Positions 3,801-58,434 of a DNA stretch of 64,000 nucleotides are shown here, piece by piece. The position numbers and the translations under genes are program-made. The DNA is taken from the NCBI GenBank assembly GCA_965637545.1, contig OZ281496.1, positions 20,770,001 to 20,834,000 of the forward strand, written 5' to 3'. Position 1 is the stretch's first letter. Each line of letters opens with the position of its first letter. The stretch comes from Phallusia mammillata (Eukaryota). The notes below the pieces were generated by a model that ran no database searches, was not told the DNA's origin, and worked only from the letters and a program-made list of their open reading frames with translations.

Positions 3801-6800
3801 CTCAGTAGTTATAAGAGCATTACTCACTGCAATGTCCATCAATATTTTGTATTGCTTGTTGGGTTTCAAATATATAGCAATATTTTGAATGTATCATTAC
3901 AAATTACAACAAAAATTTGTAAAATTGTTTCATAGACTAAATTAACTTTTGAAAATATAATATCATGAAATATAAGCAATAACAAAAATCACCTTTACCT
4001 ATGACTAAACTGATGTGTACTGAATATTTTCTGAAATTTAACACACATAAAACATATTGCTACTATTTTATAAGAATGAGCCTTTTTCAAGTTTAGGCAG
4101 CATATACACAAAACAACTTTAACAATTGGAAAATGCATATTTATGTTTAGGTAAGTCTACTGGTATTGTGACTAACACAAGAGTTCAACATGCAACCCCA
4201 GCAGCATCATATGCTCATATTACTCAAAGGTAAACAAAAAAAAGTTTATGCAGTCATTTTGACATATGCTTTTTGCAAATATTTGATATTTTAGTTTTTT
4301 ACTGTATGCAGGTAAACTTTATATTAAAACACTTACTTAAAGTCTACAAATCCGGTATGCAAACATTAATTATGATTATTGCATCAAACGTCAACTCACT
4401 TTTTGCAACAGACAATAAAAACAAAAAATAAGAATCAAAATAGAACTACACATTTGAACAAAAACATTTAAAGTGCTTACCTTTGTAGAAAACGCGTTTG
4501 ATGCTCCTCCAACAAAACTTGTTTTGGCTATAGTGGATGATTAAGTGTCATATCATAAATTTAGGGTAAAAACTCACAGTCAAAGCCGCTGAAAAACTAA
4601 TTTTTGAATCATTTTTGCTTTTCAGACGTTGGTATTCGGACAGAAGAGTGCCAAGAAAAAACAGGAAAAACTGCAAAGATATTGCAACGCAGTTGTTTGA
4701 AAAGCGTTTGGGCATTCAGGTAAATTGCCAAGTTAGCTGTAACCTTCTGTTTTTTGTTGATGTTTTGAAAGGCGGCATACAACATTGCAGTGTTTCCAAA
4801 ATGAAAATGAAAATAAGAAAATGTATCCAAAACATGTTTGTTGTTGCAGGTAATACTCGGTGGAGGGAGATCTCCAATGCGTCCAAACAACGTCAAGGAC
4901 GAAGAATTTCCGTCAAAGAAAGGCGAACGCCTTGACGGAAGAAATCTGATTAAAGAATGGGAAATGGATTTGAATAAGCGGGGGAAAGAGGCCGAGTGAG
5001 TTTAATGGATTTAACACATTTTCTTTGGACATTTTCTTTTTGTTGGCTACATGTATACTTCCAACGCACATGTTTGCAACGGCAATGATTTCAGTCGCAT
5101 ATCTATTTAGTTTGTTATCTTATTGAAACTATGTTCGGGTTACGGGGTCAAATTAGGACTACATTCATTCAACGCAAAGCAAATTACATTTTGAATGAAA
5201 ACGTACAACCAAATACCACCTTGTCGTGCTTTGATTTGATCTCTTTCAGGCCTAGCGTCTTGTAAGCACATGCTAACTTTAAAAGACCAAATTTTACAGG
5301 TACGTTTGGAACAAGGAACAGTTTATGAATGTGGATGTCAACAGCACCGACTATTTGTTAGGTTTATTTAGTCCGTACGAGATGAAATATAAGCTTGACC
5401 GCTTTAAAGATGTGAGTGGGGAACCAAGCCTTGCCGAAATGGTGCAAAAGGTCAGTTTGAATTGAATTTTGATTTATCTTTAGCAAATGTTATATTTGTA
5501 AAAATACTTAAAAATTGTAAGTCATGTGATTTAACACAACTAAACGGCAAAATGTCAAACGTCAGGCATAATTTTTCGATAATATCACAACCCTCAAACA
5601 TCCTAACCTGAAAATTATGTTGTTGTTTCATTTTTAATATGCTTTACGCGACAAAAACGGTTTTAAGTGTCTTAAGGGCATTGTTAAATGCAAAACCAGC
5701 CTATACCGCGGATAAAACACGACCTAAACATCACATACCCTGATCGAGCTCGATGTAGCCTCACCACACGGACGTGGATGGCGATATCATCGACAGGAAG
5801 TGTGGTTTTCTCAAGTCTGTTTACATTTTTGATTTTGCACACCTTGAGTGACCGTTTTAGGGTTGATACACTACGTTTTGCAGCTGTGCACTGCGGTAAT
5901 TGAATTACAAACCAACGTCGTTATAATAAATACTTGATGTAGCACATGTCAACATGAGCGGAAGTTAAAGGTCGAATTAATATAAACAGGTGTTTATATG
6001 AATGTTAGCACTTCAGGTGCTTATACTGTGTTCGTGATACTCACTGTTACATCTCCACGTTCAGTTACGCATGATTAACTTGTCTCATTATTCCACTGCT
6101 ATGACGTTACAATCGCCATGTGCGTAACAGTAAAATTAGAAGGCCTTTGTCTGTATGTTGCAATGATTAGTTCATTTTACTGTACAACGTGGTCGAGTAA
6201 GGTGATTTATTACTGCATTAAGTAAATTCGTTTGTGTTGCATTTTTAGAGACGAATAAGGCTAAATTAAATATTGTGACGACTGACTAATTAATCTTCAA
6301 GTGAAGGCTGTTTACCGTGATTGTCGGTGAGTGTTTAATTCGATTTGTGACCTAAATTAATTCATGGCTTTATGTGTGACTTATGGCATGCTGTATTTTC
6401 CTATAGTGATTGCAGCGATTGTTTCATCGTCTTGCAACTGTTGATACGTGTACTGTACCTGTTGACCTGTGTCGCAAAATAGTTGGTAAGTTAGTCATTG
6501 GCATTTTTGTGCGTTGACATATGTCAATGTGTTTCGTTTTCTTGTTTAGAAAACCGTTCCCGTACCCGTTCCCGTTTCGTTCTCAACCCTGTTTCTGTCC
6601 GTTCCTGATTGTGTACGACGTTGTGGTTGTTGCCGCTGTTGTCGCTGTGGATTATTACACGTGATTCGGGAAGTGTGATTTGTGTGGGAAAGGGCGGGGC
6701 GTGTTTCAACGTGACAAACCCCTTTGTGAGGCTCAGCCTTGCAGGTCGGCCGTTCAGAGTCTACATAAAGAAGTTTTCAACTATTGCTCGTTGAAAAGGA

Positions 6801-9800
6801 AGTTTCAACTGTCGCTGATTGAGAGAAGCTTTCTACTCTTCCTTATTGGAAAGAAGCTGTTGCTTGGTTAAAAAATGAATTCCGACACGATTGAAGAAGA
6901 TAAGGGTGAACAGCTCATCAAATTGCAACGTTTATTGCAAGAATCCTACACCCAAACGGAACGTTTAATGGTCAGTCCCAATAACTTAGTTTCTGTACAT
7001 TCATCAGTGCGAATTATAAATGAAAGGTACCGACTTCTTGTGGAGCACATTACTTCAAATTCACCTGAAAATGAAGACCTTGTCAAGGATTTGTTAAAGC
7101 GATACGCTGAGGAGAAGACGGAGTTTGATAGCAGGGTTGCTGAATGGATCGAAAAGGCCCAGCCTGCTACGTCCCCACCGCCACAAGCTGGTTCAAAAAA
7201 GTCGGCAAAAAGTTGCACTTCTAGTTGCCGTACTTCAGCAAGTACGAGTTCCAGTGTTCGTAGAACTGAAGCACGAATTAAGCTTGAGATGGCTCGCGCA
7301 AAACTTCGTCAGGCCAAGGAAAGACAGGACGAGGAGAACGAGCGACGAAAGAAGCTGCTTGATGACGAACGCAAGTTGCGTGATGAAGAACAGAAGTTGC
7401 GTGAGTCAGAGCGCCGATTGACAGCCGACGCAGAAATTCGCGAGGTACAACGTCAAGCCGAACTAGCCGAAATCGAAGCTCGCGGATGGGAAGGTAAATT
7501 CGAAGCGGAATTCGTTTATCCGCCAACCGTAGAGAGGCCTTTTGTGCAAACGGTCACCGAATGTCCAAAACCTGTACCGCGTTGTGATAGGCAGGAGCTG
7601 CCTAAAGTAAGTCATCAGCCTCCTATCTATGCTACTCCGCAATACGATTGTCAAAATAGGAATAATCCCACAGTAGCGCAGGAACCTCGTTACAGCTCAG
7701 ATGAGCGTTTTCTACCGCGTCCGAAGATAATGTCATTTAACGGCGATCCAATGGAATACTGGACGTTCATTCGCAACTTTGAAGCGCACGTTGCCACTAA
7801 AGTTCACTCTGACGATTTGCGGTTGGTTTATCTGCTGCAACATTGTGATGACAAAGTGCGACCTAAAATTGATCACTTGACGAAAAGGCCAGTCGAGGGT
7901 TACCGACAGGCACGTCAAAAGCTATTTCATGAGTACGGACAGCCGCACATTATCGCAAATGCCTGTGAGCAGCATTTGAAGAAGAGTCCTCGCTTGAAAG
8001 GAGATCAACCGGAACGACTAATGCAGTTTGCAGATCTGCTGGAAAAATGTCTCACTACACTGGAGGATATCGATGAATATGCCGGTCTTAATTCACTTGA
8101 CACCATGCTGCAGCTCATTGACAAGTTGCCATATCGCTTGCAGGAAAGATGGATAGAGCGATCAGTCGAAGTTCTACATCGCACTAATCGTGAAGCCGGG
8201 TTTAGCCACTTTGTTCAGTTTGTTTCGGAGCGTGCTGAGGTGGAAAATTCCCTCTACGGAAGTAGGATTATGGGTTCTAGGCGCGACAAGGATCCTGGTC
8301 CACCGATGAGAAAGCCAAGAGCGTCTGCGTACGTTGTGAACCCAGTAGAAGTTCGGCAGCGTCCGGCAGAGAGGCCGACTACTTCCGCTACGTGTCTGTT
8401 CTGTGGTAAGGCTCACGATTTGTCCAAGTGCTTTGAGTTTAAACGTAAAACGTACTCCGAACGTGTGGAATTTGTCAGTCGTAAGAGATTGTGCTTCAGA
8501 TGCCTTACTCCAGGTCATCGTGTAAGAAGATGTAAAGCGAGAACTGCCTGCGAAGAAAACGACTGTTCGAGTCACTATCACCACACATTGCTGCATAGGC
8601 CTGCTCCAGCCGCAAAGCCAGAGTCACCAGCGACACCGGTTGAACCACAAAAGGTCGCTTCATGTTCAGTAGCAACGCCCGGCGAATGCGGTTACGACGA
8701 CGTGTATCAGTGTGTCGTACCGGTTGAGGTAAAATACGAAGGCCGGAAGGTTTTAACTTACGCATTTTTGGATATCGGCTCTACCGGAACCTTCTGTAAC
8801 CAAAGGTTGATTAAAGCCCTGGGCATGAAAGGTGAAACTAAGGAGATTGTTTTGCAAACACTGACAGATGAAGCCAAAGAGCATACGGCTGTTTCAGTGA
8901 GTTTCTCTGTTTCTCCAGTAGGTGGCGGAGATGATATATTTCTCCCTAAAGTAATAACCGTTGGTGAAATCCCCGTTCGTCCTAATCCGATTCTTAGCAA
9001 AGAAGCATTAAGGGGTGCCCCACATTTACGTGACTTGGATTTTCCCTTAATCGAGAAAGGAACTGTAACATTGCTGATTGGTCTGGATAATCCAGACGCC
9101 TTGTTCATTGATGAGATGCGTCGTGGTCCAAAAGGGAAACCGTTTGCTGTCAAGACACCTTTTGGATGGACATTATTTGGCCCTTCACTCCTTCCGTGTG
9201 CATCATCGAGGTATCAGGTGAACTTCGTGAAGTCTAGAGACAGCTCTTTACAGAAGCAAATCTCTAGTCTGTGGGAGACAGATTTTGGGGACGAAACTGC
9301 TGTTCTAGATTTCCCCACGTCGCGCGAAGACAGAAAGACGTATGGTATCATGCAAAAGAACGTGAAAATGGTGGAAGGTCACTATGAGCTGCCGTTGCCG
9401 TGGAGAGAAAGCTCAGCTTGTTTGCCAGATAACAAGCCAATGGCCGAAAGACGGCTGACGTACTTGAAGCGACGCCTGGAGAAGGATCACTCACTGAAGG
9501 AAAAGTACGTGAGCACAATGCAGTCCTACCTCGAGAAAGGGTACGCAAGAGAGATACCTCGAGAAGAAATCGAATCGGTTGATGGTGTTTGCTGGTATTT
9601 ACCACACCATCCTGTACTTCATCCCCGTAAACCAAACAAGGTTCGTGTAGTTTTTGACTGCGCTGCAAAGCACAAGGGCGTTTCCCTCAATGATGTGCTG
9701 ATGCAGGGCCCGGATCTCGTAAACAGTTTGGTGGGTGTTTTGACTCGATTTCGCAAAGAGCGGTACGCTTTGGTGGCCGATATAGAATCGATGTTCCACC

Positions 9801-12800
9801 AGATTCGTGTTACCCCTAAGGACAGGGACGCCTTGCGATTTCTGTGGTGGCCAGGAGGGGATTGGACAAATCAACCAACAGCGCATCAAATGACTGTGCA
9901 CCTGTTCGGGGCGACTTCATCCCCTAGTTGCGCGAGTTTTTGCTTGAAGCAAACAGCCTTGGATTTTGGTCAAGATTTCAATGCACAAGCGTCTTCGGTC
10001 GTCAGAAGAAATTTTTACGTGGACGACTGCCTGACTTCGGTTGCATCTACAGTGGAGGGAATTCAAATGACCAAAGAGATTTCAGATTTGTTGTCACGTG
10101 GAGGATTCCACTTGACAAAATGGCTCAGTAATAACCAGAAGATTCTGTCAAAAATTCCTGAAGAAGAGAGGTCAAAGGCAGTGCGAAACAAAAGCTTGAG
10201 TGATGACGTCACAGAGAGAGTGCTTGGTGTCCACTGGAACGTGCACGAAGATACGTTTGGATTTAAGGTCAACCTTCCTGAAACGGCGAAGACTCGAAGA
10301 GGACTTCTTTCTGCATTGAGTTCACTGCACGACCCTCTTGGATTCGTTGCACCGTGCACGCTTGGAGCCAAATTATTACTCCAAGGTTTGTGCAAACGTG
10401 GAGTTGGCTGGGACGACTGCATTTTGGAATCGGAAGCAACACAATGGAGCGAATGGCTTGGGCGTTTACCGAAGCTTCATGACCTGTGTCTTCCTCGTTG
10501 TTTTAAGCCCGATGATTTCGGCGATGTGCAAAGTTGGGAGTTACACCACTTTGCAGATGCTTCCTCCGTGGCCTACGGAGCTGTGTGTTATCTGAGGATA
10601 GTCGACGTCGGTTTGCGTGTTCACTGCGTGTTTCTTGTTGGCAAGTGTCGACTAGCGCCGCTGAAAACAGTGTCAATTCCAAGACTGGAACTGACGGCGG
10701 CAGTTCTATCCGTGAAGCTAGATGAAATGATGCGACGAGAGCTTGGCTTGCCAGTGCATCGGTCTGTGTTCTGGACAGACTCCACTGCCGTCCTACAGAG
10801 CATCAGGAATTCGAAGAAGAGATTCCCTACGTTCGTTGCTAATCGAATTGCAAAGATTGAAAGGCAAAGCGATCCTTTAAGCTGGAGACATGTTCCTTCA
10901 AAGCTCAATCCGGCAGACGAGGCGTCACGTGGATTGACGTCAGAAGCGTTAGTGACGTCTGGCCGCTGGTTGCGCGGTCCGCAGTTTTTGTTGGAATCTG
11001 AGGATCACTGGCCTGTGAGTCCGATTGTTTTACCCGACTTGCCTGCTGAGTTCAGTCCCGTAAAAAAGCAGGAAGTCTCCATACATATGGTCGTAGAGAG
11101 GCAGTCCATAGTTGAGAGGATCATCCATCGGTACTCTTCGTTGCATCATTTGAAAAAGAGTATCGCCTGGCTGCTTCGATATAAGAAGTTTTTACTGTCG
11201 CGTGTTCGCGGTAACAAGGCTGTGGTGGAGAATCGTGGATCATTATCTGTTGAAGAATTAAATGCTGCCGAACTGGAGTTGATTAAATATGTGCAGCGAA
11301 AGCATTTCAGCCCTGAGCTTGCTGCGTTGGAGAAGGGATCTCTTTCCAAGACCTCTGTGAAACGTCACATGTTCAAACTAAATCCAATGGTTGTTAACTC
11401 CGTGCTTCGAGTTGGTGGTCGACTAGAAAAGGCTTTCATTCCGTACGATGCCAAACATCCGATTCTTCTACCACATTCGTGTCATTTTACTGACTTGGTT
11501 ATCGAGAGACATCATCGTCTTGTCGGACATTCTGGGATGGGCCACACTTGGTCGTCGCTGCGCCAAAGGTTTTGGATACTTAAAGGTGGAGTAGCCGTAC
11601 GCCGAGTGATTGGGAATTGCCTGTTCTGCAAGAGAAGAAATGCTTCCGCTGGAGTACAGAGGATGGCAGACCTTCCTTCAGCAAGACTGCATCCGGACGA
11701 GCCCCCGTTTTCACACGTAGGGGTGGATTATTTCGGTCCCTTTCCAGTTAAGCAGGGACGGAGCATCGTGAAACGGTATGGAGCAGTGTTTACCTGCCTT
11801 TCAATTCGAGCTGTCCATATCGAAGTTGCCCACAGCCTATCTACAGACTCGTTCATCGACGCGCTTCGTCGCTTCATTGGTCGGCGTGGGAATCCTGTAA
11901 ATATATATTCCGACAATGGGACGAACTTTGTCGGTGCAGAACGGATACTGAGAGAATCACTGCAGTCTTGGAACCAAGTTCACATTGAGGAGTACCTGAA
12001 ACAAAGCGGAATTCGTTGGTCGTTCAATCCCCCGACAGCCAGTCATATGGGAGGTGCGTGGGACGAATGGTGCGCTCCATCCGGCGAATTCTGACGTCTC
12101 TGATGACACAGCAAGTTGTTTCCGACGAAACATTGTCAACGCTTTTTGTTGAGGTTGAGTCAATACTCAACTCGCGTCCTCTTGTTCCTGTCACCTTTGA
12201 TCCCCGAGATGATGAACCGATCACACCCAATCATCTCCTGCTCATGAGATGCAACTCGAATTTGCCTCCTGGCTTGTTCGACAAAAAGGACTGTTACGTG
12301 CGGCGCCGTTGGGCGCAAGTGCAGTACTTGGCGAATCAATTTTGGATCCGCTGGGTTCGCGAATATCTACCGAACATCATTTCCAGGCAGAAGTGGTTCC
12401 AGAAGAGGAGAGATCTCCAGATCAACGATGTGGTTCTCGTCGTGGATGATTCACAGCCACGCTCCAAGTGGTTGATGGGTCGCGTTGCGGATACATTTCC
12501 CGATAAAACGGGAACTGTACGCTCGGTGCTTGTGCAAACGCGATACAATCGTGTCAAACGACCGATTGCAAAACTTTGCTTGATTGTCGCCGCTGAAAGT
12601 GATGTTTAGTGTGCTGTTTTGTTTATTGAATTTCGTTGAACGTTCGATGTTTGTTTGTGTGTGAAATGTATTTACCCGGGTCATACATTTAGGTGGGGGT
12701 ATGTTACATCTCCACGTTCAGTTACGCATGATTAACTTGTCTCATTATTCCACTGCTATGACGTTACAATCGCCATGTGCGTAACAGTAAAATTAGAAGG

Positions 12801-15800
12801 CCTTTGTCTGTATGTTGCAATGATTAGTTCATTTTACTGTACAACGTGGTCGAGTAAGGTGATTTATTACTGCATTAAGTAAATTCGTTTGTGTTGCATT
12901 TTTAGAGACGAATAAGGCTAAATTAAATATTGTGACGACTGACTAATTAATCTTCAAGTGAAGGCTGTTTACCGTGATTGTCGGTGAGTGTTTAATTCGA
13001 TTTGTGACCTAAATTAATTCATGGCTTTATGTGTGACTTATGGCATGCTGTATTTTCCTATAGTGATTGCAGCGATTGTTTCATCGTCTTGCAACTGTTG
13101 ATACGTGTACTGTACCTGTTGACCTGTGTCGCAAAATAGTTGGTAAGTTAGTCATTGGCATTTTTGTGCGTTGACATATGTCAATGTGTTTCGTTTTCTT
13201 GTTTAGAAAACCGTTCCCGTACCCGTTCCCGTTTCGTTCTCAACCCTGTTTCTGTCCGTTCCTGATTGTGTACGACGTTGTGGTTGTTGCCGCTGTTGTC
13301 GCTGTGGATTATTACACGTGATTCGGGAAGTGTGATTTGTGTGGGAAAGGGCGGGGCGTGTTTCAACGTGACAAACCCCTTTGTGAGGCTCAGCCTTGCA
13401 GGTCGGCCGTTCAGAGTCTACACTCACCAAGAATATTTAACACCGACTCTATTGAGTTTTGAAACCACTCTGACGGAAGCTGGAGTAAACCACGTGTTCG
13501 TGACGTCAATACGTGTTGTGTTTATTGGATTCGTGATGTTTATAGAAGTCATGCACCGGTCGCTCTTAAGTTTGGCAAGTTCAGTCGTTGCTAGTAGACC
13601 ACCTAACAGTGGCCATGTATAAATAGACACACCTTGTGAAGTGGTACGATGCTGTAAAATGACAGGAAAATGTGTACAAAAATACGACATTTTATACTAC
13701 TGTTCTATGGTGGTATATACTTAACCAATGCATGTATACTTAAACAAGTTAGTCTTTGTATTTGTGCAGTTAAGGTAAAAACAACAGATCACAATAAATG
13801 AAGGCTTAAATGGCACCTTAACCGGTTTCCATAAACGTTTTTGTGTACTCGTCTTTTCACATCCAGTGTATCATCATATACAACCACACATAGACGAGGC
13901 CGAAATAATTTTTGTAAACTACATTGAAGGCCTTTAAATTTAAAACTAGAACGACATTTTTAAAACAATCCGGGTCAGACGTGTTGCATTTGTAAACAGA
14001 AGCGTCTCAGACCTTTTCGACATTGCCACCTTCGACGGAACGTAACGTCTAACTCTAAAGTTTTTACCTCTGAAGCCAACATAGAACGTAATTTACAAAT
14101 TAAAAAACATTATAAAGGCATAATGTTTTTGTAAAAAATGATGTAAGCATGAGTATTTTTAGGTTAACTTCTAACGCCCTAATTTTTTACTGTTTGACAC
14201 TGCTTCGTACCAATCTTAATCGAGCTGCTCTTTATCTCTATGAGTCACTGCAGTGCTTTGAAATCATAGGGCCGATTGCTCGTCACTAGGACTAACGGTA
14301 ATCTGACTATTTTACATTTTGTGTATTTGTGAGCCTTTTAGGCCACGTGTCTTTTTTATCGCAGGGACCGCTTCGCTTTAAAATTTAATTATAAATTAAT
14401 TTTTTCAGGCGATAGAGATTCTGAGCAAAAATCCTAAAGGATATTTTCTGCTTGTCGAAGGAGGATTGCTTGATAAAGCTCACCATCAGGGATTGGCAAG
14501 ATATGCTTTACAGGAGTTTATCGAAGTCGACAACGCCATCGAGGTCTGTATTAACTCGATAATAATTGAATAAACCGGGGAACGGTCCGGCGCGCCTGAC
14601 CTTTATACCGACGTAAAAAAAAATCTTGATCGGGATTCGTCCCCGGAAGCGTCCTGGGTTCGAACCCCGGGAAAAAAGGATGCTGACGGTTGGGTCATTT
14701 GGGTTGCGTTTGCTTTTATAATAACAATAAAACCTACTTATAAACTTAGTTTCTAACAATAAATTAAATTATTTACCCTATCCGCAGCCTCACTGTCGAT
14801 TTTAAAAACTGTGCTCTTTGCGCCATTTAACGGTTGTAGCAAACGTTTGTCTGCTGTGACTTCTTATGTTAGTGGATCAGAGTTGCAAGTCGGGCCGGGC
14901 TTTTCGGGCCGGGTTCGGGTTCGGGTTCGGGCCGGGTTCGGGATTAGGTATTTGTCAAAAAACGGGCTCAAAACGGGCCTGACTTTACGTTCCGTTTCCG
15001 CCATTTTTAGTAACAATTCTCTGGCTTTGCCCTAATGCCCACCCGACTATAAAACGTAATGTTTACCCCATTGTCAACGATTGTTCATTGTGTTTGTCTT
15101 CTTATTTTTTTTCTTTCTCATACTTTGTTGCAAGGTTTTCGTGGATAGGCCTGTCAATCAAAATTTCGGGCCCAAACGGGCTTCTCAAAAACGTTTGGGG
15201 TTCGGGCCGGGCTTCGGGCTCAGATTTCGGGCCCGCTTGCAACTCTGTAGTGGATATACCTTTTTCGACAGGTTGCACGTGCTATGACTTCAGAGGAAGA
15301 TACTTTGTTTTTGGCTACGGCTGACCACGGTCACATGTTTACATTTGGTGGTGGGGCAGTAAGGGGAAATCCTGTTATGGGTGAGTGTTCGGAATATAAA
15401 GCGTTAGAAAAAAAAGATTTGTTACCCTTAACAATATCGACGTATATTAAGCTTTCTTGTGTGTTAATAGGCCTTGCCTCAAGTCAAAGACATCCCACAA
15501 AAGCGCTCGACCTCCGATATTTTACTTCGATTCTCTACGGAACTGGACCGGGATTCTCGATTTATTCTAAAACCATTCCTGTTCGAAAATCTATAAAGCC
15601 ATGGGAAATATGTAAGTATTTACATTTATCGCATGATTTTGCGAAAGTCCTTGTCAATATGAACCCATACGTTTGTAGGCCCAGCGCACATGGATTTTTG
15701 TAGTATTCAACCAAACAAAGTGGATGATGTGGTTGGCCAAAATTGGCGTAAACATTTACTTTTTAATTAACATATTTCAAGGAGGTTTTAGGCTTAGTCA

Positions 15801-31893: not shown

Positions 31894-32543
31894 TCAACCA
31901 GACCTATTTTAAACGTACAGTAGCTCCGTAAAAAAACTAAAATTTCATTTGTCCAGACGAAAATTACATGTTTTTTGTCTGGCGCCAATTGATAGGAGGT
32001 AATTAATCCTAAACAGATAGTAACGTAGAACTTAAGCGCCAAGGTAGGCAGACATAAGCAATTCATAAATGAATTAACCGTCAAACACAAACTCCAAGTT
32101 ATGGTAAAAACAACATTCATTGATCACACATGTATTTAACATAACCACACGTATATGCGTTTGAAAAAAAATACAGTATAGCGACCAAGACTAGCCTACA
32201 TATGCTTTGCGTTTAAATCTCGTTGGATTTTTTACGTTCGTGCTAAACTTTTGCAACGTCAATGCCTATTTCATGAAATCTTTCTTTACTGTTTGAAGTT
32301 TCGCAGAATGCAACTCATTGTAGATACACGGTGCGTAATTTAAAATCTGTTTGTAATTTTGTACATTTGAATCTGATGTTATTAAAGTTGGTATACCTAA
32401 ACGTTATTTGTGTACAATAAAATACCACAAAAATCTGCAAACACCCATAAAAACTATATCTCAATGCATTTTGTTGCTGGGTCATCGAAAGTTGCAGGCG
32501 GTTCATTTGTGTTGGGTGATAAACAATTTTTGACGAAAAAGGG

Positions 32544-32616
32544 AGGCACCACTGGGATTCGAACCCAGGATCTCCTGTTTACTAGACAGGCGCTGTAACC
32601 GCTTAGCCATGGCGCC
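32544..32616 (-). tRNA. trnT: tRNA-Thr (anticodon AGT)
   Basis: GGCGCCATGGCTAAGCGGTTACAGCGCCTGTCTAGTAAACAGGAGATCCTGGGTTCGAATCCCAGTGGTGCCT folds into a full cloverleaf, anticodon loop CTAGTAA, downstream TTTTT Pol III terminator at 32536-32540. Confidence 0.95.
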
Positions 32617-38550: not shown

Positions 38551-39228
38551 TGTAACATCGTAAATCACTCAACCGTAACCTAGGTCACATCTTATATGGT
38601 GTGATTGCACCACAATGTCAGAATCCCCTATGACGTAACAATATCATTGTGGTTATTTCTCTATGCTGTGCTTTTGGCCATTTAGTATTGAGTTTAGTTT
38701 GGACCACGTGTAGTTCGTTAGTTGCTGACTTAAATTTGCAAGCGTTAGATAAAGTAATGAAAGTGACTAAATATAATTTGTTTGTCATTAATAGATGGTA
38801 ATGCTAACTTTATAACTCTGACGAAAAAGGAATAATGTTGCCTTTGCAAGGTAAGCTTGATTTGCATTAAAGTTGTCTTATCGCAATTAACCGTATATTA
38901 AAAGTCTACGTTTTTATCTGTGTAGAACACTTTCTGGTGATATCAAACTGTGTTTATCTTTGATACCCTGGTCCAAAACTCTGGTAAGCTTTATTTCTGC
39001 CGGTATAAATTTAATTTCTGTTTCGCATTTTTGAGTGAATGTTCTCTTTGCAGAAAACCGTGATTATCTTGTCGTATTGAACCGTGTCTATCGTGTCGTG
39101 TCGTGTCTACCGTGAACGTGACGTGATTACCGTGTCGACGTGTAAAATAAATTCACGCGTTTCCAGAAATTGGACTTATCTAGTGTGACGCCAGCGCGGT
39201 ACCAGGCGCGCAAATTCCTGACGTTACA
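38551..39228 (+). repeat. 5' LTR of BEL/Pao #2
   Basis: Direct repeat of 45559-46231; AATAAA near 39146. Confidence 0.96.
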
Positions 39229-39344
39229 TTAAAGTTTTCAGAGTTTCCTGAAAATAAAGTTTTCAGAGTTACCTGGAAATAAAGTTTCCAGTGGCTACTA
39301 TACATAAAGATTCCAGAGTTATCTATAAAGCGAATTTCGCCACG

Positions 39345-42300
39345 ATGGCTGAAGATTTGGAAAAGACACCATCTCCGATGGAATCGCCGGTGCCTACACG
39401 TTTGAGACCATTTGCTGCACAATCTACGCCGATGTGCAGATAAATTGAATAGCTGGTATGTTGTGGCTGAAACTGGCATTCCAAATAAAGAGCATTCCAC
39501 GTTGCGAGTGGCTCAAAAACAAATTGACGAAAACTACACGATACTTCACAGTATGTACGATGCATTTATTAATTCATGTAACGACCCAGAGAAACTTGCT
39601 GCCTCCAAAGAAGATTTAAAATCTCTTGAGCAGAGCAAACTTGAATTCGAAACTAGAGTATCAGAGCTACCGCCTTCCAAAATGCCTGACTCACTGCCAG
39701 AACTTGTTCTAAGTCCACAGTTCAGGGCCCCAACTGTTGTTTCCAGTAGGACGTCACGGTCTGGCCGCTCACGTTCATCTAGCGCGAGCACATCTGCTAC
39801 GGAGAGAAGTCGCCGAGAGGCAAAGGTAGAGCGGCAGCTTGCGCTAATCCGCCTCAAACAAATTGATGAGGAAAACGATCTTGCTAAGCGCGAAGCGCTT
39901 GAAATAGAAGAGCAGAGAAAACATGCCCTGGAAAAGGAAGAAAAACAGAGAAAGGCAGCGCTAGAACAAGAACAAAAACAAAGAAAGGCGGAAATTGCTC
40001 TACAAGCGGAAAAGCGGAAACTACAAGCAAAATACGAATTTCAGGCTGCCGACGCAAGAGCCAGAATCCTAAATGAAGACGACGAAGGTTTATCACAAAC
40101 GGACATGAGGTCCAACGACGATCAGGTTCCAGACGTAGTGACGGTTTTTCCGGATGATGCCTCCAATGACGGTATCATGACGTCCTCTGCTGCTAGGAAC
40201 TGTACGTTTCCTATCCGCGATAGAGAAGAACCACAGGAAAGTATGCGTCCTAGTGTACGTGTTCCTGTGACTAAAGCCCATTCAGTTGTTAAAGTGAACG
40301 AAGAAAACCCAGCTGTGCTTCCATACATAGTGAAGGCAGTTGGAGAGGGCATGAGTATGCCGAAGCCCGATCACATGACGTTCTCGGGCAATCCTACTGA
40401 TTATTGGATGTTTGTACGCTACTTTGAATCCAATCTTGAATGCAAAACACGGAGCGATGATATGCGATTGACACTGCTTATAAATCAGTGCAAGGGAAAA
40501 GCGAGGTCTTTAATTGAACATTGCTCTGTTCTAGATACGAAAGAAGGTTATCCCAAGGCCAGAAGCATTCTTTATGAGAACTTCGGTAAGCCCTACATAG
40601 TTGCTAGAGCCTTTGTTGAAGAGTTAACTAAGGGTCCGAACTTGAAGCCCGACGATGCTACTGGAATGCGTACTTATGCGCAAACTATGAGGAAATGTCT
40701 ATTGGTACTTCACCAGCTAGGAAATTTTGCTGATCTCAACACAGTTGACCGTTTAGTGGCTCTTGCAAATAGGCTCCCGTACGAGTCGCAAAAGCTTTGG
40801 CGCCGCCGAGTCGCGCAGACTGTAAGGAAAACCGGAAGAGAAGCGGATTTTGCCGATCTCGTTGAGTTCGTCGAAGAAGAGTCTGCCGTTGTAAATACTT
40901 TACCTGGTCAATTGTGTGTTTCCCGAAAGGCTGAAGAAAAGAAACGCCCCGCAAAACCCGGTGGGAGGAACGTTACCTGTGCGACTGTGACCACAAACCA
41001 GAGTCCTGCTCCTGTGTCACCAATAAGCTGCCCGTGTTGTAAACGAAATCACGTGTTGGAAAGATGTGAAGTGTTCGGCAGAAAGTCCACGGTGCAGAGA
41101 AGAGAGTTTCTAAGAGATAAGTTTATGTGCTTTAACTGTTTTGGTTACCGACATACGTCAAGGGTGTGTACCCAGCCCAGTGCCTGTACTGTGAGAGGTT
41201 GCAACCTTTCACACCACACGTTGCTACATGAAAATATGCAAAATTCCGTGCGTTCCAGGACATACGCGCATGCTCCTGAGAGATACAACAGAGCTCCGCG
41301 CAGCGAACCTTCTAATGGACAGACATCGAGTTCTACAGCCAGGTGCAACGCGATAAAGAATTGTCATTCATCTTACTTTTCTGTTATTCCAGTGAAAATT
41401 CGGTCGAACGGTCAGGAGATCATAACGTACGCGTTCCTCGACCAAGGGTCTGACACAAGCTTCTATGACAAAAAGTTGGCAGATCTGCTTCCAATAAGAG
41501 GAAGACCAAAACAAGTTACGATGTCCAGCGTCGGAAGAAGACCGGCGAACCATAGCGGAATAAGCGCGAGTTTCAGCGTTTTATCATTAGATGGAAATGA
41601 AGAGATAAGTGTCGACAATGCTTTGTCCATCGACACCATACCAGTTGAGCCGAATCCGACACCAACAAAGTCGGAAGTGAACAGGTTTCCACACCTACAG
41701 GGTTTGGAATTTCCTGTGTTGGATGAAGGAGAGGTGCTACTACTTATCGGCACTGACGTCCCATACGCACATAGAGTACTGGAAATGAGAACAGGGGAAC
41801 GCAAGCAACCTTTTGCTGCGAGAACCCCGCTTGGATGGTCACTTGTTGGCCCATCCGTCTGCTATCCTGCTGTTGATAATATTTCGGTAAACTTCTTTAG
41901 ATGCAAAGAGACCCAGGAACTAAGCGGTGATTCTTGGGTGGACGAATTTATGCAAGACCCAAACGACTTGCCCTTTCCTACGTCAGTTGAAGACCGGAAG
42001 GTGCTACGCATGATGAAGAGCTCAGTGAAACACACGGACGGACATTTTTATTTGCCTCTTCCGTGGCGAAGTGATGTTACTTTACCGAAAGACAGCCGTC
42101 ACATGGCTGAACGACGGCTTTGGTCGCTGAAGAAACGCTTTTCGCGTGACGTCTCTCTTAAAGACAAGTATGTCCAGAAGATGCAAGACTACATTGATGA
42201 GGGATACGCAGAAGAAGTTACAAATGAAGAAGCCGAGGACGCTTCAGGCAAAACTCAATGGTATTTGCCACATCATCAAGTTTGCCACCCGCGCAAACCC

Positions 42301-45274
42301 GACAAGGTACGCATCGTTTTTGATTGCGCAGCGCAGCACAGAGGATTGTCTCTTAACGACGCCTTGCTGCAAGGTCCCGATTTGGTTAATAGTTTAATCG
42401 GTGTCTTGGAACGATTTCGTATGAACAGTATTGCTCTGGTAGCGGACGTGGAAGCAATGTTCCACCAGGTCCGCGTTCACAAGTCTGACATTGATGCTTT
42501 AAGGTTTTTGTGGTGGCCAGGGGGAGATCTATCCCGAACGCCCACCGTTCATCGTATGCTCGTGCACATTTTTGGCGCAACGTCATCGCCCAGCTGCGCC
42601 ACATTCTGCTTGCGTGAAACCGCCGAGCAGTTTGGAAAAATGTTTGATAAAGATGTTGGCGACATCGTCCGTAATGATTTTTACGTAGACGATTGTTTGA
42701 CGTCAGCCGAAACAGTCGAGCGTGCCACCGAGTTGGTCACGCAACTACGTGCCTTGCTGAAGAAAGGAGGATTTCGCCTGACCAAATGGCTATCTAACGA
42801 TCAACGTGTCTTGGATCAAATTCCAGAGGCAGAGAGAGCAAAATCGCTAACCGATGTAAACTTGGACGCTTCCGTAAAAGAGCGCGTTCTAGGTGTTTAC
42901 TGGCGGGTACAGAGTGACGAATTTGGATTCAGCATAACTGACACGATGCAAGGCAAGAAATTTACCCGACGCAATATTTTATGTGCTGTTAACACGCTTT
43001 ATGACCCTTTGGGTTTTGCCGCACCTGTAACTTTGATTGCTAAGGTGTTACAACAGGAAATAGTCCGACAGAAGCTGGGGTGGGATGACGAGCTGCCTAA
43101 AGACGATATTGAAGAATGGCGACGCTGGCTTTCTCAATTGCCGGAGCTCGAGAAGTTAACACTTCCCCGCTGCTTTAAGCCTCCTACTTTCGGCTCAGTC
43201 GCGAAGTGCGAGATGCACCATTTTTCGGATGCTTCAACTCAAGGCTATGGAATTGTGTCCTACCTTCGTCTGGAAGATGTTGATGGACAAGTCCACTGCT
43301 CGTTTCTATTTGGCAAATCGAAGGTGACACCCCCGAAAACTGAAAGCATTCCGAGGCTTGAACTTGCTGCTGCTGTCTTAGCTGTAAAAGCGGACAAATG
43401 GCTTAGAAGCCAATTAAAATTTGATAACTGCGAGTCCGTGTTTTGGACAGACTCGTGTGCCGTCCGACAAAGTATTTACAACCAAAGCAAACGCTTTGGT
43501 ACGTTTGTTGCCAACAGGTTGGCCGAAATTCATCGACAGACAAGTCCTGATCAATGGAGGCACGTAAATTCCCAGCTAAACCCCGCCGATGATGCTTCGC
43601 GACGTTTGTCCGTGCACAAGCTCATCCGCTCTCGATGGCTGACTGGTCCAAAGTTTCTTTGGCAAACTAAAGATCGATGGCCAACCCCGCCGGAGTTGAA
43701 GACTCAGCTTCCTCCAGAGTTCCAGCCAGCTGAGCGGAAGAGGATTGTTGTAAACGTTTCTGCACAGTCAGGGTCAACCGATCGTTTGCTGAATCGATAT
43801 TCATCTCTTCATAACCTGAAGACAACGGTCGCATGGCTGCTGCGTTTTAAGTCGTTCCTGCGCTCAAAGATTTCCGTGCCCACCGGCAAGCTGAGCGTGG
43901 ATGAGCTGAAGGATGCGGAGTTAGAGATAATAAAGTATGTGCAACGCCAGTGTTTCGCTCCTGCTATCGACGTTTTGTCCAGCGACGGACAATCCGATAG
44001 GGAGCTGCAAAGGAAATTGAAGAAATCGCCACACGCTAATTCGTTGGCGAAACTTAGCCCCCAGGTTTTCAATGGCCTACTGCGAATTGGGGGGAGATTG
44101 GAAAAAGCGCCTATTGCCTTTGACGCAAAACACCCGATTATACTGCCGTATGATCACCACCTAACAAGAATGATTATTCAAAGCCATCATCAAGAAGTTG
44201 GCCATTGTGGAACTGCTCATACCTGGACGTCACTGCGCCAGCTCTTCTGGATTATTAAGGGAGGCGCCGCTGTGAGGAAGGAACTCAGCAATTGCATGCT
44301 GTGTCGCAAGAGAACCGTACGACGAGGACAACAGCAAATGGCGGAACTGCCATTCGCCCGATTGAAGCCTGATGAGCCACCGTTTACTTACGTTGGCATT
44401 GACTACTTCGGTCCATTCATGGTGAAGCGAGGAAGAAGTGAAACGAAAAGTTATGGGTGCATATTCACCTGCTTGACTATGCGAGCTGTACACATCGAGG
44501 TGGCACCTGATTTATCCACTGATGCATTTATCAATGCCCTGCGTCGATTCATAGGAAGAAGAGGCAGACCAAAGGAGATATACAGCGATAACGGCACGAA
44601 CTTTGTTGGTGCTGAAAGAGTATTACGTGAAGCCCTACAAGGTCTCCAGCAGTCCCGACTAGAATCGTACTTTAAACGACTGGAAATCAAGTGGAATTTC
44701 AATTGTCCCGCTGCTTCCCACATGGGAGGTTCGTGGGAGAGAATGATTAGATCTATTCGTCGCATCCTAAATGCGATGTTAACAAGAAACCAACCGATCG
44801 GTGCGGACATGTTGCAAACTTTGATGATCGAAGTGGAAAGCATTTTAAATTCCAGACCGTTGACACCGATCAGCTTCACTTCTACTGAAGATGAACCACT
44901 GACGCCCAACCATTTGTTGTGTTCCAGTGGGACTTATCAATCCAAAGGACTGCTATAGCCGAAGACGATGGAAACAAATCCAACTTCTCGCCGATGATTT
45001 CTGGAGAAGATGGTCTCGGGAATATTTGCCCACAATTGCCTTACGCCAAAAGTGGCCTGACCGACAACGCAATTTCCAACCGGGAGATGTGGTGATGATC
45101 GTTGATGAGACTCAGCCTCGACGTCGATGGGAGATTGGACGCGTTCTGCACGCGTTTCCGGACAAACACGGTGTTGTCCGCCAAGTCAACGTTAAAACGC
45201 AATCCGGTTCCACGTATAGACGGCCGATTGCAAAGTTGTGCTTGCTCTGTGAGGCGAGCACCCAATGCCAATAA
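39345..45274 (+). CDS. gag-pol: BEL/Pao gag-pol polyprotein with frameshifts near 39405 and 44920
   Basis: Likely start ATG at 39345 (CCACGATGG) is out of frame with the 1848-aa ORF 39412-44958; the C-terminus continues in 44927-45274. Three Cys-His knuckles, [44 protein letters not shown]. Confidence 0.93.
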
Positions 45275-45558
45275 GTGCATCCGACGCATTCAGGCCACGC
45301 AGTCGTCGAACTGGCCCTGAATTGCGGTGCACAAGATCCTAATTGCGATGAAAGAAGAAATATCATGGACGCTATGCTGTTTGCTGCGTTATACATGCCG
45401 CACTCTGAAATACGCCAGGTTGGAACTTTGCTCACCAACGGCGTTTCGCGACGCGACTGTTTAGCTTTCGTGTGTGTTTTCGCTGTTTCATGATTCGATG
45501 TTTTCTTGGTTTGTTTGTAAATGTGTTTGAAGTGTAAGCACACATTTAGGGGGGAGAA

Positions 45559-46231
45559 TGTAACATCGTAAATCACTCAACCGTAACCTACGTCACATCT
45601 TATATGGTGTGATTGCACCACAATGCCAGAATCCCCTATGACGTAACAATATCATTGTGGTTATTTCTCTATGCTGTGCTTTTGGCCATTTAGTATTGAG
45701 TTTAGTTTGGACCACGTGTAGTTCGTTAGTTGCTGACTTAAATTTGCAAGCGTTAGATAAAGTAATGAAAGTGACTAAATATAATTTGTTTGTCATTAAT
45801 AGATGGTAATGCTAACTTTATAACTCTGACGAAAAAGGAATAATGTTGCCTTTGCAAGGTAAGCTTGATTTGCATTAAAGTTGTCTTATCGCAATTAACC
45901 GTATATTAAAAGTCTACGTTTTTATCTGTGTAGAACACTTTCTGGTGATATCAAACTGTGTTTATCTTTGATACCCTGGTCCAAAACTCTGGTAAGCTTT
46001 ATTTCTGCCGGTATAAATTTAATTTCTGTTTCGCATTTTTGAGTGAATGTTCTCTTTGCAGAAAACCGTGATTATCTTGTCGTATTGAACCGTGTCTGTC
46101 GTGTCGTGTCTACCGTGAACGTGACGTGATTACCGTGTCGACGTGTAAAATAAATTCACGCGTTTCCAGAAATTGGACTTATCTAGTGTGACGCCAGCGC
46201 GGTACCAGGCGCGCAAATTCCTGACGTTACA
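45559..46231 (+). repeat. 3' LTR of BEL/Pao #2
   Basis: After the PPT, followed by TSD CGTTG. Confidence 0.96.
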
Positions 46232-47233
46232 CGTTGTTTTTCGGGTTATGACAAACGTTATATTTTATCGGTAGTTTGTCTTGGGTTTGAATTGAGCGAT
46301 TGTTGGTGGTGAATGCATTAATGACGTCGCAATGAATTTAGTTTCGCCACTTTGCACTTGGGGCACATGCGCGTTAGGTGTTTGGGGCGCGTGCTCGTTA
46401 GATGAAAATACCGCAAGTTTCTTTTAAATTAAGGGAAAATCTTTTAAATAAACAATTTTTGTCAAGTTAGCCTTCAAATTGGCAGTGAAAAAAGATTTTA
46501 GCAATTTACCAGAAATGAATCTCACCGCACGTTATATATAGAATGAGAAAAAAGGGGTATTTTAATTCATATGTTTTTGTTTGATGGATTCGTTGAAATG
46601 AGAGTTTTGTGTGAGAGACAGTGTTTTCACTGACCATTTATTGTTGAAAATGACTGGTCCGTGGTAGGTACAAGTCAAATTGTGTCATTATTATGTTGGT
46701 GTGCGACATTTAGAATAGATCTGGCTAAGCACAGGTCTCTGTGTGTGAGGAAGGGACGAGCCATTAAACATATGTGCTTATGTGTATAATGTGGCTCTTT
46801 GTGGTAACACAATAAAAAATATGGCTCTTAGGCTTTGACCGGTTGGCCACCCCTGTTATAGTGTTTAATCGCACATATGATGACCAGAACAAAAAGGACA
46901 AAACACCGAGTGAGTGTCTTGAAGTACATCATATTGTAATTTATATTTTACACAAAAGCGGTAGCCTTTATTGTTGCATAATATCATTGGTTGACTACGT
47001 TGTGATGTCCTTTAATTTGGTTACATAAAAATTAGCAAAACAAAGAAGCGTTTCCTTAATTAGGGTACAAGAAAACAGAACCTCTCGTACAAACGCAATC
47101 ACTTAAACCAGTGGTTTTTAACCTTTTTTCCTTGCTGCACCCCTTTCAAATCACCAACCAAATTTCGAACCCCCTGGGGTTTTGTATTTGTATAGGATAG
47201 ACCTAACCAACCTTAATGATTCAGCATCCTCGC

Positions 47234-57706: not shown

Positions 57707-57927
57707 ACTGGCTGTTGCATAAATATTACGTGGCAACACTTGCTTATAAACTTTAATTTTTCTTGGTTGAACTTTCTTGTGTTACCCATACAGAACTCTT
57801 CGAAGCTCCATAAACGCGTCATATACGAATAGAACTAATCCGTGCCAAGAATGTACAATACATGATCTTAATTGTACCATTTTCATTTAGCTGTTATCTA
57901 CTAAAGTAAACTTACGTACCTTAGCAG

Positions 57928-58434
57928 CAGTGTTTCATACCGGAACGGAACGGTACGTTATACCGGAACGAAATAAATAATTTTTGGCTCAAATACCGGA
58001 ACGAAATACCGAAATAAAAAAAATTCAAGATACCGGAACGGAACGAAATAGGCTACCGTTATTTTTTATTCCGGTATTTCGTTCTGGACATTTATTATGA
58101 AACAATTGCTGAAAATTTCGCGCCGTTGAACTATAATAAAAATTGAAGCTCCACAATTTACATCCGTTTGACCATCATTGACAAATGTTATGTGACGTAA
58201 CAACTACCGACAATAATTGTTGTGTGTTGCAACTTTTTTTTCGTTTTCGCTTAATAGTTGTAAAGACCACAAAGAAATGTTTTTTTGTTAAGACCGAAAT
58301 ACCGAAAAATACCGTTATAATTTTATTTCGGTCAGACCGGAACGAAATGAAAATATCGGTCCAGAACGAAATAAATAATTTGCTCAGAACGAATAACGTT
58401 ATTTGATTTCGTTCCGTTCCGGTATGAAACACTG
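57928..58434. mobile_element. hAT MITE with TACCGGAACG subterminal repeats
   Basis: 25-bp perfect TIR CAGTGTTTCATACCGGAACGGAACG, 8-bp TSD CTTAGCAG. Confidence 0.93.

What the first reader, a model, noticed from the sequence alone, without database searches (positions are those of the whole stretch)
6766..6874. No tRNA primer-binding site: an AAG-led hairpin array occupies its place (element #1)
LTR retrotransposons normally have TGG... (complementary to tRNA 3'-CCA) a few nt after the 5' LTR. Here the LTR is followed by TAAAG and three 26-29-nt units, each AAG plus a stem-loop: TTTTCAAC/GTTGAAAA (6774-81/6790-97), TTTCAA/TTGAGA (6803-08/6819-24) and CTTTCTA/TGGAAAG (6829-35/6847-53). A fourth AAG and the gag ATG follow. 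Loops differ while pairing is kept, including G-U pairs, which points to RNA-level structure. Identical LTRs and a TSD show recent transposition, so minus-strand priming evidently worked. I saw no complementary segment in the LTR for Tf1-type self-priming. Inference: a tRNA-independent priming or packaging signal.
Basis: partly seen in the sequence, partly recalled or inferred. Interest (0 to 1): 0.85.

Follow-up and report, generated by a model that had tools for sequence, protein, structure and literature searches.

The report
Self-priming BEL/Pao retrotransposon, intron-split primer
A sea-squirt jumping gene has no tRNA docking site. Instead, the bases just after its terminal repeat pair with a stretch of that repeat that becomes continuous only once a small intron is spliced out, so it most likely starts DNA copying with its own RNA; the reported "hairpin array" is a dispensable tandem repeat.

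Summary

- **The element:** element #1 (6045-13422) is a BEL/Pao retrotransposon of a Phallusia-like sea squirt.
- **The "hairpin array":** it is a decayed 29-nt tandem repeat with one to about six units among 24 genomic copies. Copies with a 39-nt leader and no array have transposed, and the leader folds no better than shuffles.
seven bases after the LTR, 6773-6785 is perfectly complementary to LTR bases 6478-6485 plus 6550-6554. These become one 13-nt stretch when a 64-nt GT..AG intron inside the LTR is removed.
- **Splicing evidence:** RNA contigs show that junction. Two genomic copies have LTRs lacking exactly both LTR introns.
- **Relatives:** eleven of twelve elements studied (the window's two, other tunicates, sea urchins, a starfish, a coral) carry their own 10-15-nt complement in different letters. 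Nine are split by an intron at the same spot. Ten of twelve leaders match their own LTR best.

Best explanation: Tf1-like self-priming, with the primer completed by splicing. The scan had already proposed self-priming for other BEL/Pao families of this genome. The intron-split primer and the splicing evidence are new here.

The parts
6040..6044 (+). Target-site duplication CTCAC (second copy at 13423-13427)
6045..6765 (+). 5' LTR, 721 nt, TG..CA, identical to the 3' LTR
6247..6248 (+). AG acceptor for the host spliced leader (SL trans-splicing) inside the LTR
   Evidence: a contig of run X8 carries a cDNA adapter plus ATTCTATTTGAATA joined before 6247. The 16-nt ascidian SL is described in PMC1488885.
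6327..6406 (+). LTR intron 1 (80 nt, GT..AG)
   Evidence: joints in runs X1, X5 and X8. It is missing exactly in the LTRs of copies L070 and L071.
6478..6485 (+). Self-primer, first part (AATAGTTG), the last 8 nt of LTR exon 2 (6407-6485)
   Evidence: exact complement of 6778-6785
6486..6549 (+). LTR intron 2 (64 nt; GTAAGT..pyrimidine tract..TAG), which splits the self-primer
   Evidence: contigs of X8 and X15 continue from 6485 into the letters of 6550-6563. It is missing exactly in L070 and L071. The genome holds 66 LTRs with this donor and 3 without the intron.
6550..6554 (+). Self-primer, second part (AAAAC). The proposed cut follows it, at the conserved AAC|C boundary.
6766..6772 (+). 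Purine-rich spacer TAAAGAA between the LTR end and the primer-binding site
   Evidence: Relatives have spacers of 2-7 nt.
6773..6785 (+). Primer-binding site for the element's own RNA. The core 6773-6782 is unchanged in all 24 copies; 6783-6785 vary.
6766..6874 (+). Leader: decayed 26-29-nt tandem units.
6875..12094 (+). gag-pol open frame, 1739 aa (DUF1759 gag, aspartyl protease, RT, Peptidase_A17, integrase zinc domain)
12016..12609 (+). Open frame holding the DUF5641 end of pol, in a different frame from the main ORF in this copy
12691..12699 (+). Polypurine tract AGGTGGGGG, just before the 3' LTR
12702..13422 (+). 3' LTR, with the same two introns at 12984-13063 and 13143-13206
38551..39228 (+). 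5' LTR of element #2 (BEL/Pao, 58% identical in RT; TSD CGTTG). Its self-primer is AAACTCTG (38976-38983), then a 70-nt intron (38984-39053), then AAAAC (39054-39058).
39234..39246 (+). Primer-binding site of element #2 (GTTTTCAGAGTTT) after the spacer TTAAA. It heads a 25-nt x 4 tandem array (39230-39329).

Best explanation
Element #1 is a BEL/Pao LTR retrotransposon that most likely primes minus-strand DNA synthesis with its own RNA, as Tf1 does, and not with a tRNA.

The primer-binding site is 6773-6785, seven bases after the LTR. Its partner lies about 215-290 nt upstream in the LTR and is split by a 64-nt spliceosomal intron: AATAGTTG (6478-6485) and AAAAC (6550-6554). Splicing joins them into a 13-nt perfect complement.

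Inferred steps:
1. The spliced 5' copy of the LTR pairs with the site.
2. The RNA is cut after ...GAAAAC, at the conserved AAC|C boundary.
3. The new 3' end is extended through the spacer and U5.
4. The short DNA jumps to the 3' LTR.

Everything upstream of the cut in the new LTRs is then copied from the 3' LTR of the RNA. If that copy stays unspliced, the introns are inherited. If it is spliced, intron-less copies such as L070 and L071 arise.

The AAG-led hairpin array is a by-product. It is a tandem multiplication of a unit that carries a site-like arm and a primer-like arm. It varies in number, is dispensable for transposition, and at most modulates access to the true site.

Shown: the pairing, its covariation, the introns, their splicing in RNA, the intron-less copies, and the variable array. 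Inferred: the priming itself, the cut, and which RNA form is used.
For: **No tRNA-type site.** There is no TGG within 12 nt of the LTR in any of 12 elements. The invariant 17-mer after the LTR occurs nowhere else in the genome. The five host small RNAs in hand give at most 5 nt (tRNAs) or an internal 12 nt (U4).

**Complement to own LTR, contiguous or GT..AG-split, ending within 2-7 nt of the LTR end**:
- win1 13 nt, win2 13, L067 15, L068 11, L069 12, L077 11.
- Ciona 10, Lytechinus 11, Diadema 10-11, Oculina 13, Patiria 10.
- Shuffled leaders reach the observed length in 0-6 of 300 trials for the first six elements.
- For the two later relatives where the tested match is the one adopted, the control is weaker: Ciona 9 of 200, Diadema 8 of 200. 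The Lytechinus, Oculina and Patiria matches were not tested against shuffles.

**Covariation.** The letters differ between families. In an all-against-all test, own LTR against own leader averages 11.6 nt, against 7.6 +/- 1.3 for foreign LTRs. The own LTR is the strict best for 10 of 12 leaders.

**Conserved boundary and layout.** The boundary is AAC|C in ten of the eleven and AAT|C in Oculina. A poly(A) signal lies between the primer end and the LTR end in 9 of 11, which is the layout expected if the primer heads R.

**The intron is real.**
- Splice consensus is present.
- The RNA junction 6485>6550 appears in two runs, and the intron 1 junction in three.
- Copies L070 and L071 have TSDs and LTRs lacking exactly both introns.

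**The array is dispensable.** Four copies with a 39-nt leader have TSDs and 98-99.5% identical LTRs; the two longest open frames among them are 1887 and 1906 aa.
Against: - **Transcript ends are unmapped.** RNA contigs show spliced exons upstream of the primer and an SL acceptor at 6247/48. The primer may therefore not be the first bases of the RNA, as it is in Tf1. A long 5' piece as primer would complicate the second strand transfer. Contigs cannot tell 5' LTR transcripts from 3' LTR transcripts.
- **The spacer is long.** A 2-7-nt spacer exceeds the usual 0-2 nt and requires trimming by integrase.
- **Folding does not predict the pairing.** Folding the window's spliced or unspliced 5' region gives the long-range pairing a probability near 0. 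The site pairs with the local hairpin arm instead.
- **The duplex is often shorter.** Positions 6783-6785 vary among copies, so the duplex is only 10-11 bp in most of them.
- **Poly(A) signal.** No canonical signal lies downstream of the primer in win1 or L069.
- **One relative is unclear.** L078 gives only 9 nt, p about 0.12.
- **The host tRNA set is incomplete.** It could not be assembled, so half-tRNA priming is excluded by covariation, not by a direct scan.
Confidence: 0.7

Rival explanations
1. The LTR/post-LTR complementarity is a long-range RNA-RNA contact with another role. Candidates are genome packaging or dimerisation, translation control, or a splint that brings the two exon ends of LTR intron 2 together or masks its donor. 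Priming would then be done by an unidentified primer.
For: - The pairing flanks a splice junction in 9 of 12 elements. A contiguous guide across both exon ends could in principle affect splicing.
- The primer region is not shown to be the RNA's 5' end.
- Retroviruses do have long-range 5' contacts (established knowledge).
Against: - Two elements without the intron (L068, Ciona L080) keep 10-11-nt complements.
- The partner always sits where a primer-binding site must be, 2-7 nt from the LTR end, and no other candidate site exists there.
- The duplex has a sharp conserved 3' boundary, with a poly(A) signal downstream in 9 of 11. This fits a primer heading R.
Confidence: 0.15
2. One reading: the AAG-led hairpin array itself is the tRNA-independent priming or packaging signal. 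An example would be a downstream arm folding back on the site.
For: - Hairpin 1 is a perfect 8-bp stem and is what thermodynamic folding predicts for the site.
- A similar array heads element #2.
- Changes in some copies keep pairing through G-U.
Against: - Unit number varies from one to about six.
- Four transposed copies have a 39-nt leader without any downstream arm.
- Relatives from other species have no such array but keep the LTR complement.
- Leader stability equals that of shuffles.
- Units 2 and 3 are marginal, at -2.1 and -3.5 kcal/mol.
Confidence: 0.05
3. A host small RNA is the primer: a tRNA half or internal tRNA fragment as in copia-type elements, or U4 snRNA, whose bases 59-70 are exactly complementary to 6772-6783.
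For: - There is a 12-nt exact match to host U4.
- Half-tRNA priming is known in Ty1/copia lineages (PMC6317226).
- The host tRNA set was not fully scanned.
Against: - The U4 match is internal, with no 3' end there. It stops short of the spacer and is not shared by relatives, whose sites differ in sequence while U4 and tRNAs are conserved.
- The 17-mer with at most 1 mismatch hits nothing tRNA-like beyond chance, on a background of 10 control hits.
- Covariation with each element's own LTR is not expected for a host primer.
Confidence: 0.05

Closest known systems
Tf1, Tf2 (S. pombe) and Tj1 (S. japonicus) self-primed LTR retrotransposons, and the wider Tf1/sushi group
   Same: - There is no tRNA site.
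- The site next to the 5' LTR is complementary, over about 11 nt, to a segment of the element's own LTR transcript that heads R.
- The primer is released by a cut at the end of the duplex (mechanism summarised in PMC4600332 and PMC5341516).
- Here the duplexes are 10-15 nt, with a sharp boundary and a poly(A) signal downstream.
   Different: - Those are Ty3/gypsy chromoviruses of fungi and vertebrates; this is BEL/Pao of marine invertebrates.
- In Tf1 the primer is the first 11 nt of the RNA and is contiguous in DNA. Here it is interrupted by a spliceosomal intron 4-7 nt before its 3' end, upstream exons and an SL acceptor exist, and the spacer to the LTR end is 2-7 nt.
- The cut and the priming are not shown here.
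Predicted self-priming lineages of plants (Tcn1 chromoviruses, TAR Ty1/copia)
   Same: Self-priming is inferred from LTR/post-LTR complementarity alone (PMC6317226).
   Different: They belong to other superfamilies, and the cited text mentions no intron within the primer.
Ordinary BEL/Pao elements with a tRNA primer-binding site (e.g. Achilles of the olive fly, tRNA-Tyr)
   Same: Same superfamily, domain content, and LTR and TSD style.
   Different: Achilles has an 18-nt complement to a tRNA 3' end right after the LTR (PMC4580426). The twelve elements studied here have none.
copia-type half-tRNA priming
   Same: The site lacks the TGG that pairs with CCA.
   Different: That primer is a host tRNA fragment, conserved across families. 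Here the site covaries with each element's own LTR.

Membership tests
BEL/Pao LTR retrotransposons (Belpaoviridae) | Pao-type Peptidase_A17 region, DUF1759 gag, RT, integrase zinc domain, and DUF5641 tail in one gag-pol | tested here: met
   The closest protein is from Phallusia mammillata at 96-99% identity.
BEL/Pao LTR retrotransposons (Belpaoviridae) | LTRs with TG..CA ends, a short TSD, and a polypurine tract before the 3' LTR | tested here: met
   (721-nt LTRs, 5-bp TSD). Seven further copies have 5-bp TSDs.
BEL/Pao LTR retrotransposons (Belpaoviridae) | Primer-binding site complementary to a tRNA 3' end (the usual description of the group) | tested here: not met
   There is no TGG within 12 nt of the LTR in 12 elements, and the 17-mer is unique to the element. 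The full host tRNA set was not scanned.
Tf1-type self-priming elements (mechanistic class) | The post-LTR site is complementary to a segment of the element's own LTR | tested here: met
   10-15 nt in 11 of 12 elements. The first six are significant against shuffles, and own LTR beats foreign LTRs.
Tf1-type self-priming elements (mechanistic class) | The complementary segment is the very 5' end of the transcript (first ~11 nt of R) | tested here: inconclusive
   A poly(A) signal downstream in 9 of 11 fits 'heads R'. However, RNA contigs show spliced exons and an SL acceptor upstream, and contigs cannot give a start site.
Tf1-type self-priming elements (mechanistic class) | RNase H-dependent cut at the end of the RNA duplex, releasing the primer, with minus-strand DNA attached to element RNA | not testable with these tools
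   Needs cDNA and RNA end mapping from particles.
Tf1/sushi clade of Ty3/gypsy (phylogenetic family) | Ty3/gypsy-type pol, usually with a chromodomain integrase | tested here: not met
   Pfam shows Pao-type domains, not gypsy-type. It works like Tf1 but is not a member of that clade.

The most novel reading that the evidence does not exclude
The primer of reverse transcription is assembled by splicing. Only RNA whose 5' LTR intron has been removed carries a continuous self-primer, which ties priming to nuclear processing.

The intron nevertheless survives retrotransposition, because the LTR part upstream of the primer cut is copied from the unspliced 3' LTR. This arrangement would be ancient: it is shared by BEL/Pao elements of corals, echinoderms and tunicates. 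It would be a way for a retroelement to keep introns through an RNA intermediate.
Probability: 0.35. Interest if true: 0.9.

Novelty: new variant of a known kind. Interest (0 to 1): 0.78.

Why it matters
**A new superfamily.** Self-priming is known experimentally only from the Tf1 group of Ty3/gypsy elements. BEL/Pao elements are described as tRNA-primed. My literature searches found no paper proposing self-priming for them.

**What this adds.** A whole branch of BEL/Pao, from a coral to sea squirts, shows the signature of self-priming. In nine of twelve elements the primer is split by a spliceosomal intron at a conserved position. This raises two testable questions:
- Does splicing license reverse transcription?
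- How can a retroelement keep introns in its LTR over long evolutionary times?

**A practical point.** LTR annotation pipelines that require a tRNA site will flag these abundant, young elements as lacking a primer site. A contiguous-match search for self-primers will also miss them.

Tried and rejected
- **Host tRNA catalogue.** The Rfam tRNA search of the genome was swamped by one giant tandem tRNA-Lys/tRNA-Glu array: 63 scored of about 35,000 candidates. Only four tRNA species could be compared.
- **U4 snRNA.** There is a 12-nt exact complement. I rejected it as primer because it is internal, not shared by relatives, and explained by the LTR self-primer having the same letters.
- **Contiguous Tf1-type search.** It gave only 8 nt in this element, no better than shuffles. 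The signal appeared only when relatives and the intron were taken into account.
- **Structure of the array.** The MFE z-score is -0.53. Rfam finds nothing in 6045-6950. TRF calls no repeat in the window copy, though it does in a younger copy.
- **Long-range pairing by folding.** It is not predicted.
- **RNA runs.** Only assembled contigs were available, so there are no start sites, no strand and no link between LTR exons and gag.
- **One protein lookup failed.** The coral protein P0067 is not on record.
- **Joined sequence.** The joined 5' region was only folded inside a script built from window coordinates.


Full report
**What is there.** Window 6045-13422 is an LTR retrotransposon.
- Its LTRs are identical 721-nt repeats (6045-6765 and 12702-13422) with TG..CA ends, a 5-bp target duplication CTCAC, and a polypurine tract before the 3' LTR.
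- One open frame, 6875-12094 (1739 aa), carries DUF1759 (gag), an aspartyl protease, RT, Peptidase_A17 and an integrase zinc domain. This makes it BEL/Pao.
- In this copy the DUF5641 end of pol lies in another frame, 12016-12609. Other copies have 1887-1922-aa frames.
- The nearest protein in the databases is from the ascidian Phallusia mammillata (96-99% identity). The genome is 240 Mb.

**The observation.**
- The LTR is followed by TAAAG and AAG-led units exactly as described, and there is no TGG.
- Hairpin 1 is a perfect 8-bp stem (-6.5 kcal/mol). Units 2 and 3 are marginal.
- The 115-nt leader region (6766-6880) is no more stable than its shuffles (z = -0.53). Rfam finds nothing.

**The array across copies.**
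- The genome holds 24 copies with a 5' LTR and leader. Their leaders are 39, 68-75, 97-106, 163-167 or 190 nt long, because a 29-nt unit is present one to about six times.
- Four copies with the 39-nt leader have no downstream hairpin arm at all. They still have 5-bp TSDs and 98-99.5% identical LTRs; the two longest open frames among them are 1887 and 1906 aa.
- The array is therefore a variable tandem repeat that transposition does not need.
- What never varies is the first 17 nt after the LTR (23 of 24 copies). That 17-mer occurs nowhere else in the genome.

- A scan for self-complementarity gave only 8 nt in this element: LTR 6478-6485 against 6778-6785.
- Three relatives at 37-45% gag identity from other assemblies (L067-L069) also lack a tRNA site and begin with a purine spacer and GTTTC.
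- In each, the LTR holds an exact complement of that element's own post-LTR bases.
- In three of the four elements the LTR match is followed by a consensus splice donor.
- In two genomic copies of the window's family (L015/L070 and L018/L071), the LTR reads straight from AATAGTTG into AAAA. These LTRs lack exactly 6327-6406 and 6486-6549, two GT..AG introns. L070 lacks them in both LTRs, and both copies have proper TSDs.
- With intron 2 removed, the LTR reads AATAGTTG+AAAAC, a 13-nt perfect complement of 6773-6785. The same operation gives 15 nt in L067 and 12 nt in L069.

**RNA evidence.** Contigs of public runs of the same organism were laid on 6045-7244.
- Intron 1 is spliced in three runs.
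- Contigs of two runs continue from 6485 directly into the letters of 6550-6563. This is the junction of intron-bearing copies; the intron-less DNA copies differ at 6554.
- One contig carries a cDNA adapter and the ascidian spliced leader joined at the AG of 6247/48 (the SL is described in PMC1488885).
- Contigs run unbroken across the LTR/leader boundary and the array, so the array is not spliced.
- Contigs cannot give start sites or tell the two LTRs apart.
- In the genome, 66 LTRs keep the intron 2 donor and 3 lack the intron.

**Breadth and statistics.** The table lists complement length in nt; ^ marks the intron.

| Element | Host or source | Complement | Form |
|---|---|---|---|
| win1 | this window, element #1 | 13 (AATAGTTG^AAAAC) | split |
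| win2 (38551-46240, 58% RT identity) | this window, element #2 | 13 (AAACTCTG^AAAAC, 70-nt intron) | split |
| L067 | other assembly | 15 | split |
| L068 | other assembly | 11 | contiguous |
| L069 | other assembly | 12 | split |
| L077 | other assembly | 11 | split |
| L078 | other assembly | 9 | unclear |
| L080 | Ciona intestinalis | 10 | contiguous |
| L081 | Lytechinus pictus | 11 | split |
| L082 | Diadema setosum | 10-11 | split |
| L083 | Oculina patagonica (coral) | 13 | split |
| L084 | Patiria miniata | 10 | split |

Sources.

- Element #2 also heads a 25-nt x 4 array.
- Nine of the twelve elements are split by a GT..AG intron 4-7 nt before the 3' end of the complement.
- All complements end 2-7 nt from the LTR end. 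Ten of the eleven end at AAC|C and Oculina at AAT|C.
- Shuffled leaders reach the observed length in 0-6 of 300 trials for the first six elements.
- The control is weaker where the tested match is the one adopted: Ciona 9 of 200, Diadema 8 of 200. The Lytechinus, Oculina and Patiria matches were not tested against shuffles.
- In an all-against-all test, own LTR against own leader averages 11.6 nt, against 7.6 +/- 1.3 for foreign LTRs. The own LTR is strictly best for 10 of 12 leaders.
- A canonical poly(A) signal lies between the complement and the LTR end in 9 of 11. This is the layout expected if the complement heads R.

**How it most likely works.** Every LTR element needs a minus-strand primer annealed just beyond U5. 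These elements have no tRNA-type site there, and they have a covarying complement to their own LTR. The best explanation is therefore Tf1-type self-priming (mechanism summarised in PMC4600332 and PMC5341516).

Inferred steps:
1. The LTR segment pairs with 6773-6785.
2. The RNA is cut after ...GAAAAC.
3. DNA synthesis runs through the spacer and U5 to the cut.
4. The short DNA transfers to the 3' LTR.

Under this scheme the LTR part upstream of the cut is inherited from the 3' LTR copy in the RNA. The 5' copy can therefore be spliced, which completes the primer, without loss of the introns from the lineage. The two intron-less copies would then descend from RNAs whose 3' LTR was spliced too.

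Whether splicing is required is not shown. The alternative is that the intron can loop out of the duplex.

**Weak points.**
- The transcript start is unknown, and upstream exons exist.
- The spacer is longer than usual.
- Thermodynamic folding prefers the local hairpin (duplex -13.3 against hairpin -6.5 kcal/mol).
- Bases 6783-6785 vary between copies.
- The window element has no canonical poly(A) signal downstream of the primer.

**The array re-read.** Each unit carries a copy of the site core (GTTTTCAAC) and, downstream, a copy of the primer core (GTTGAAAA). That is why every unit can form a hairpin. It is a tandem multiplication of the site region, present independently in element #2. It may compete with the LTR primer for the true site, but it is not the priming device.

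**Rivals.**
- **A non-priming long-range contact or splicing splint (0.15).** It is disfavoured by the intron-less elements that keep the complement, and by the position of the partner.
- **The hairpin array as the signal (0.05).** It is disfavoured by the array-less transposed copies.
- **A host RNA primer (0.05).** Host U4 snRNA bases 59-70 match 6772-6783 exactly. That match is internal, absent in relatives, and explained by the LTR primer sharing those letters. Half-tRNA priming could not be scanned directly, because the tRNA search was swamped by a tandem array.

**Relation to earlier work.**
- The scan had already proposed self-priming for other BEL/Pao families of this genome (s1-408637, s1-405491, s1-554135).
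- It had also noted the intron-like units (s1-545840) and the second array (s1-545841) in this window.
- I reached the pairing from my own searches before reading those notes, and tested it on a separate set of twelve elements.
- New here: the primer is split by a spliced intron at a position conserved from a coral to tunicates; there is RNA and intron-less-copy evidence for it; and the hairpin array is a dispensable repeat.
- Literature searches found self-priming described only for Tf1/sushi, Tcn1 and TAR lineages.

Noticed in passing
G000:C1:30.95-31.02 Mb (loci L031-L060): A very large tandem array of alternating tRNA-Lys(TTT) and tRNA-Glu(CTC) genes, with occasional Glu(TTC). The period is about 324 nt, over at least 70 kb. 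It swamps any genome-wide tRNA search.
   Followed up: partly
G000:C3:10.38-10.61 Mb: Dozens of U4 snRNA-like genes lie in tandem with a 691-nt period. They score lower (about 100 bits) than six dispersed canonical U4 genes (120-126 bits).
   Followed up: no
window 6772-6783 and L061 (U4 bases 59-70): There is an exact 12-nt complementarity between the leader and the host U4 snRNA central region. It is probably chance, since the LTR self-primer has the same letters and relatives lack it.
   Followed up: yes
window 6247-6248 (and 12904-12905): The host spliced leader is trans-spliced onto an acceptor inside the LTR (one cDNA contig, run X8). Some LTR-derived RNAs are therefore SL-capped. Whether these are gag-pol mRNAs from the 5' LTR or short RNAs cut out of the 3' LTR is open.
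   Followed up: partly
window 6405-6484: LTR exon 2, which ends in the first primer part, has the highest contig depth of the whole laid stretch in all four runs. The tool warns that contig depth cannot rank parts, so this is only a hint that an abundant RNA holds this exon.
   Followed up: no
window 12016-12609 versus 6875-12094: In the window copy the pol frame ends about 150-180 codons earlier than in other copies, and the DUF5641 part continues in another frame. Despite identical LTRs, this copy does not have the single long frame seen elsewhere.
   Followed up: partly
window 32542-32616 (-): A tRNA-Thr(AGT) gene.
   Followed up: no
window 56390-57598 and 56736-63960: Further direct repeats (184 nt at 97%; 167 nt at 85% with 7058-nt spacing) with no open frame of 300 aa or more in 38000-64000 outside element #2's ORF. 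This is probably an older, decayed LTR element running to the window's end.
   Followed up: no
window 6783-6784: A contig of run X1 reads G and C here. This is the leader variant of other genomic copies (L004/L005 type), so more than one copy of the family contributes to the RNA pool.
   Followed up: no
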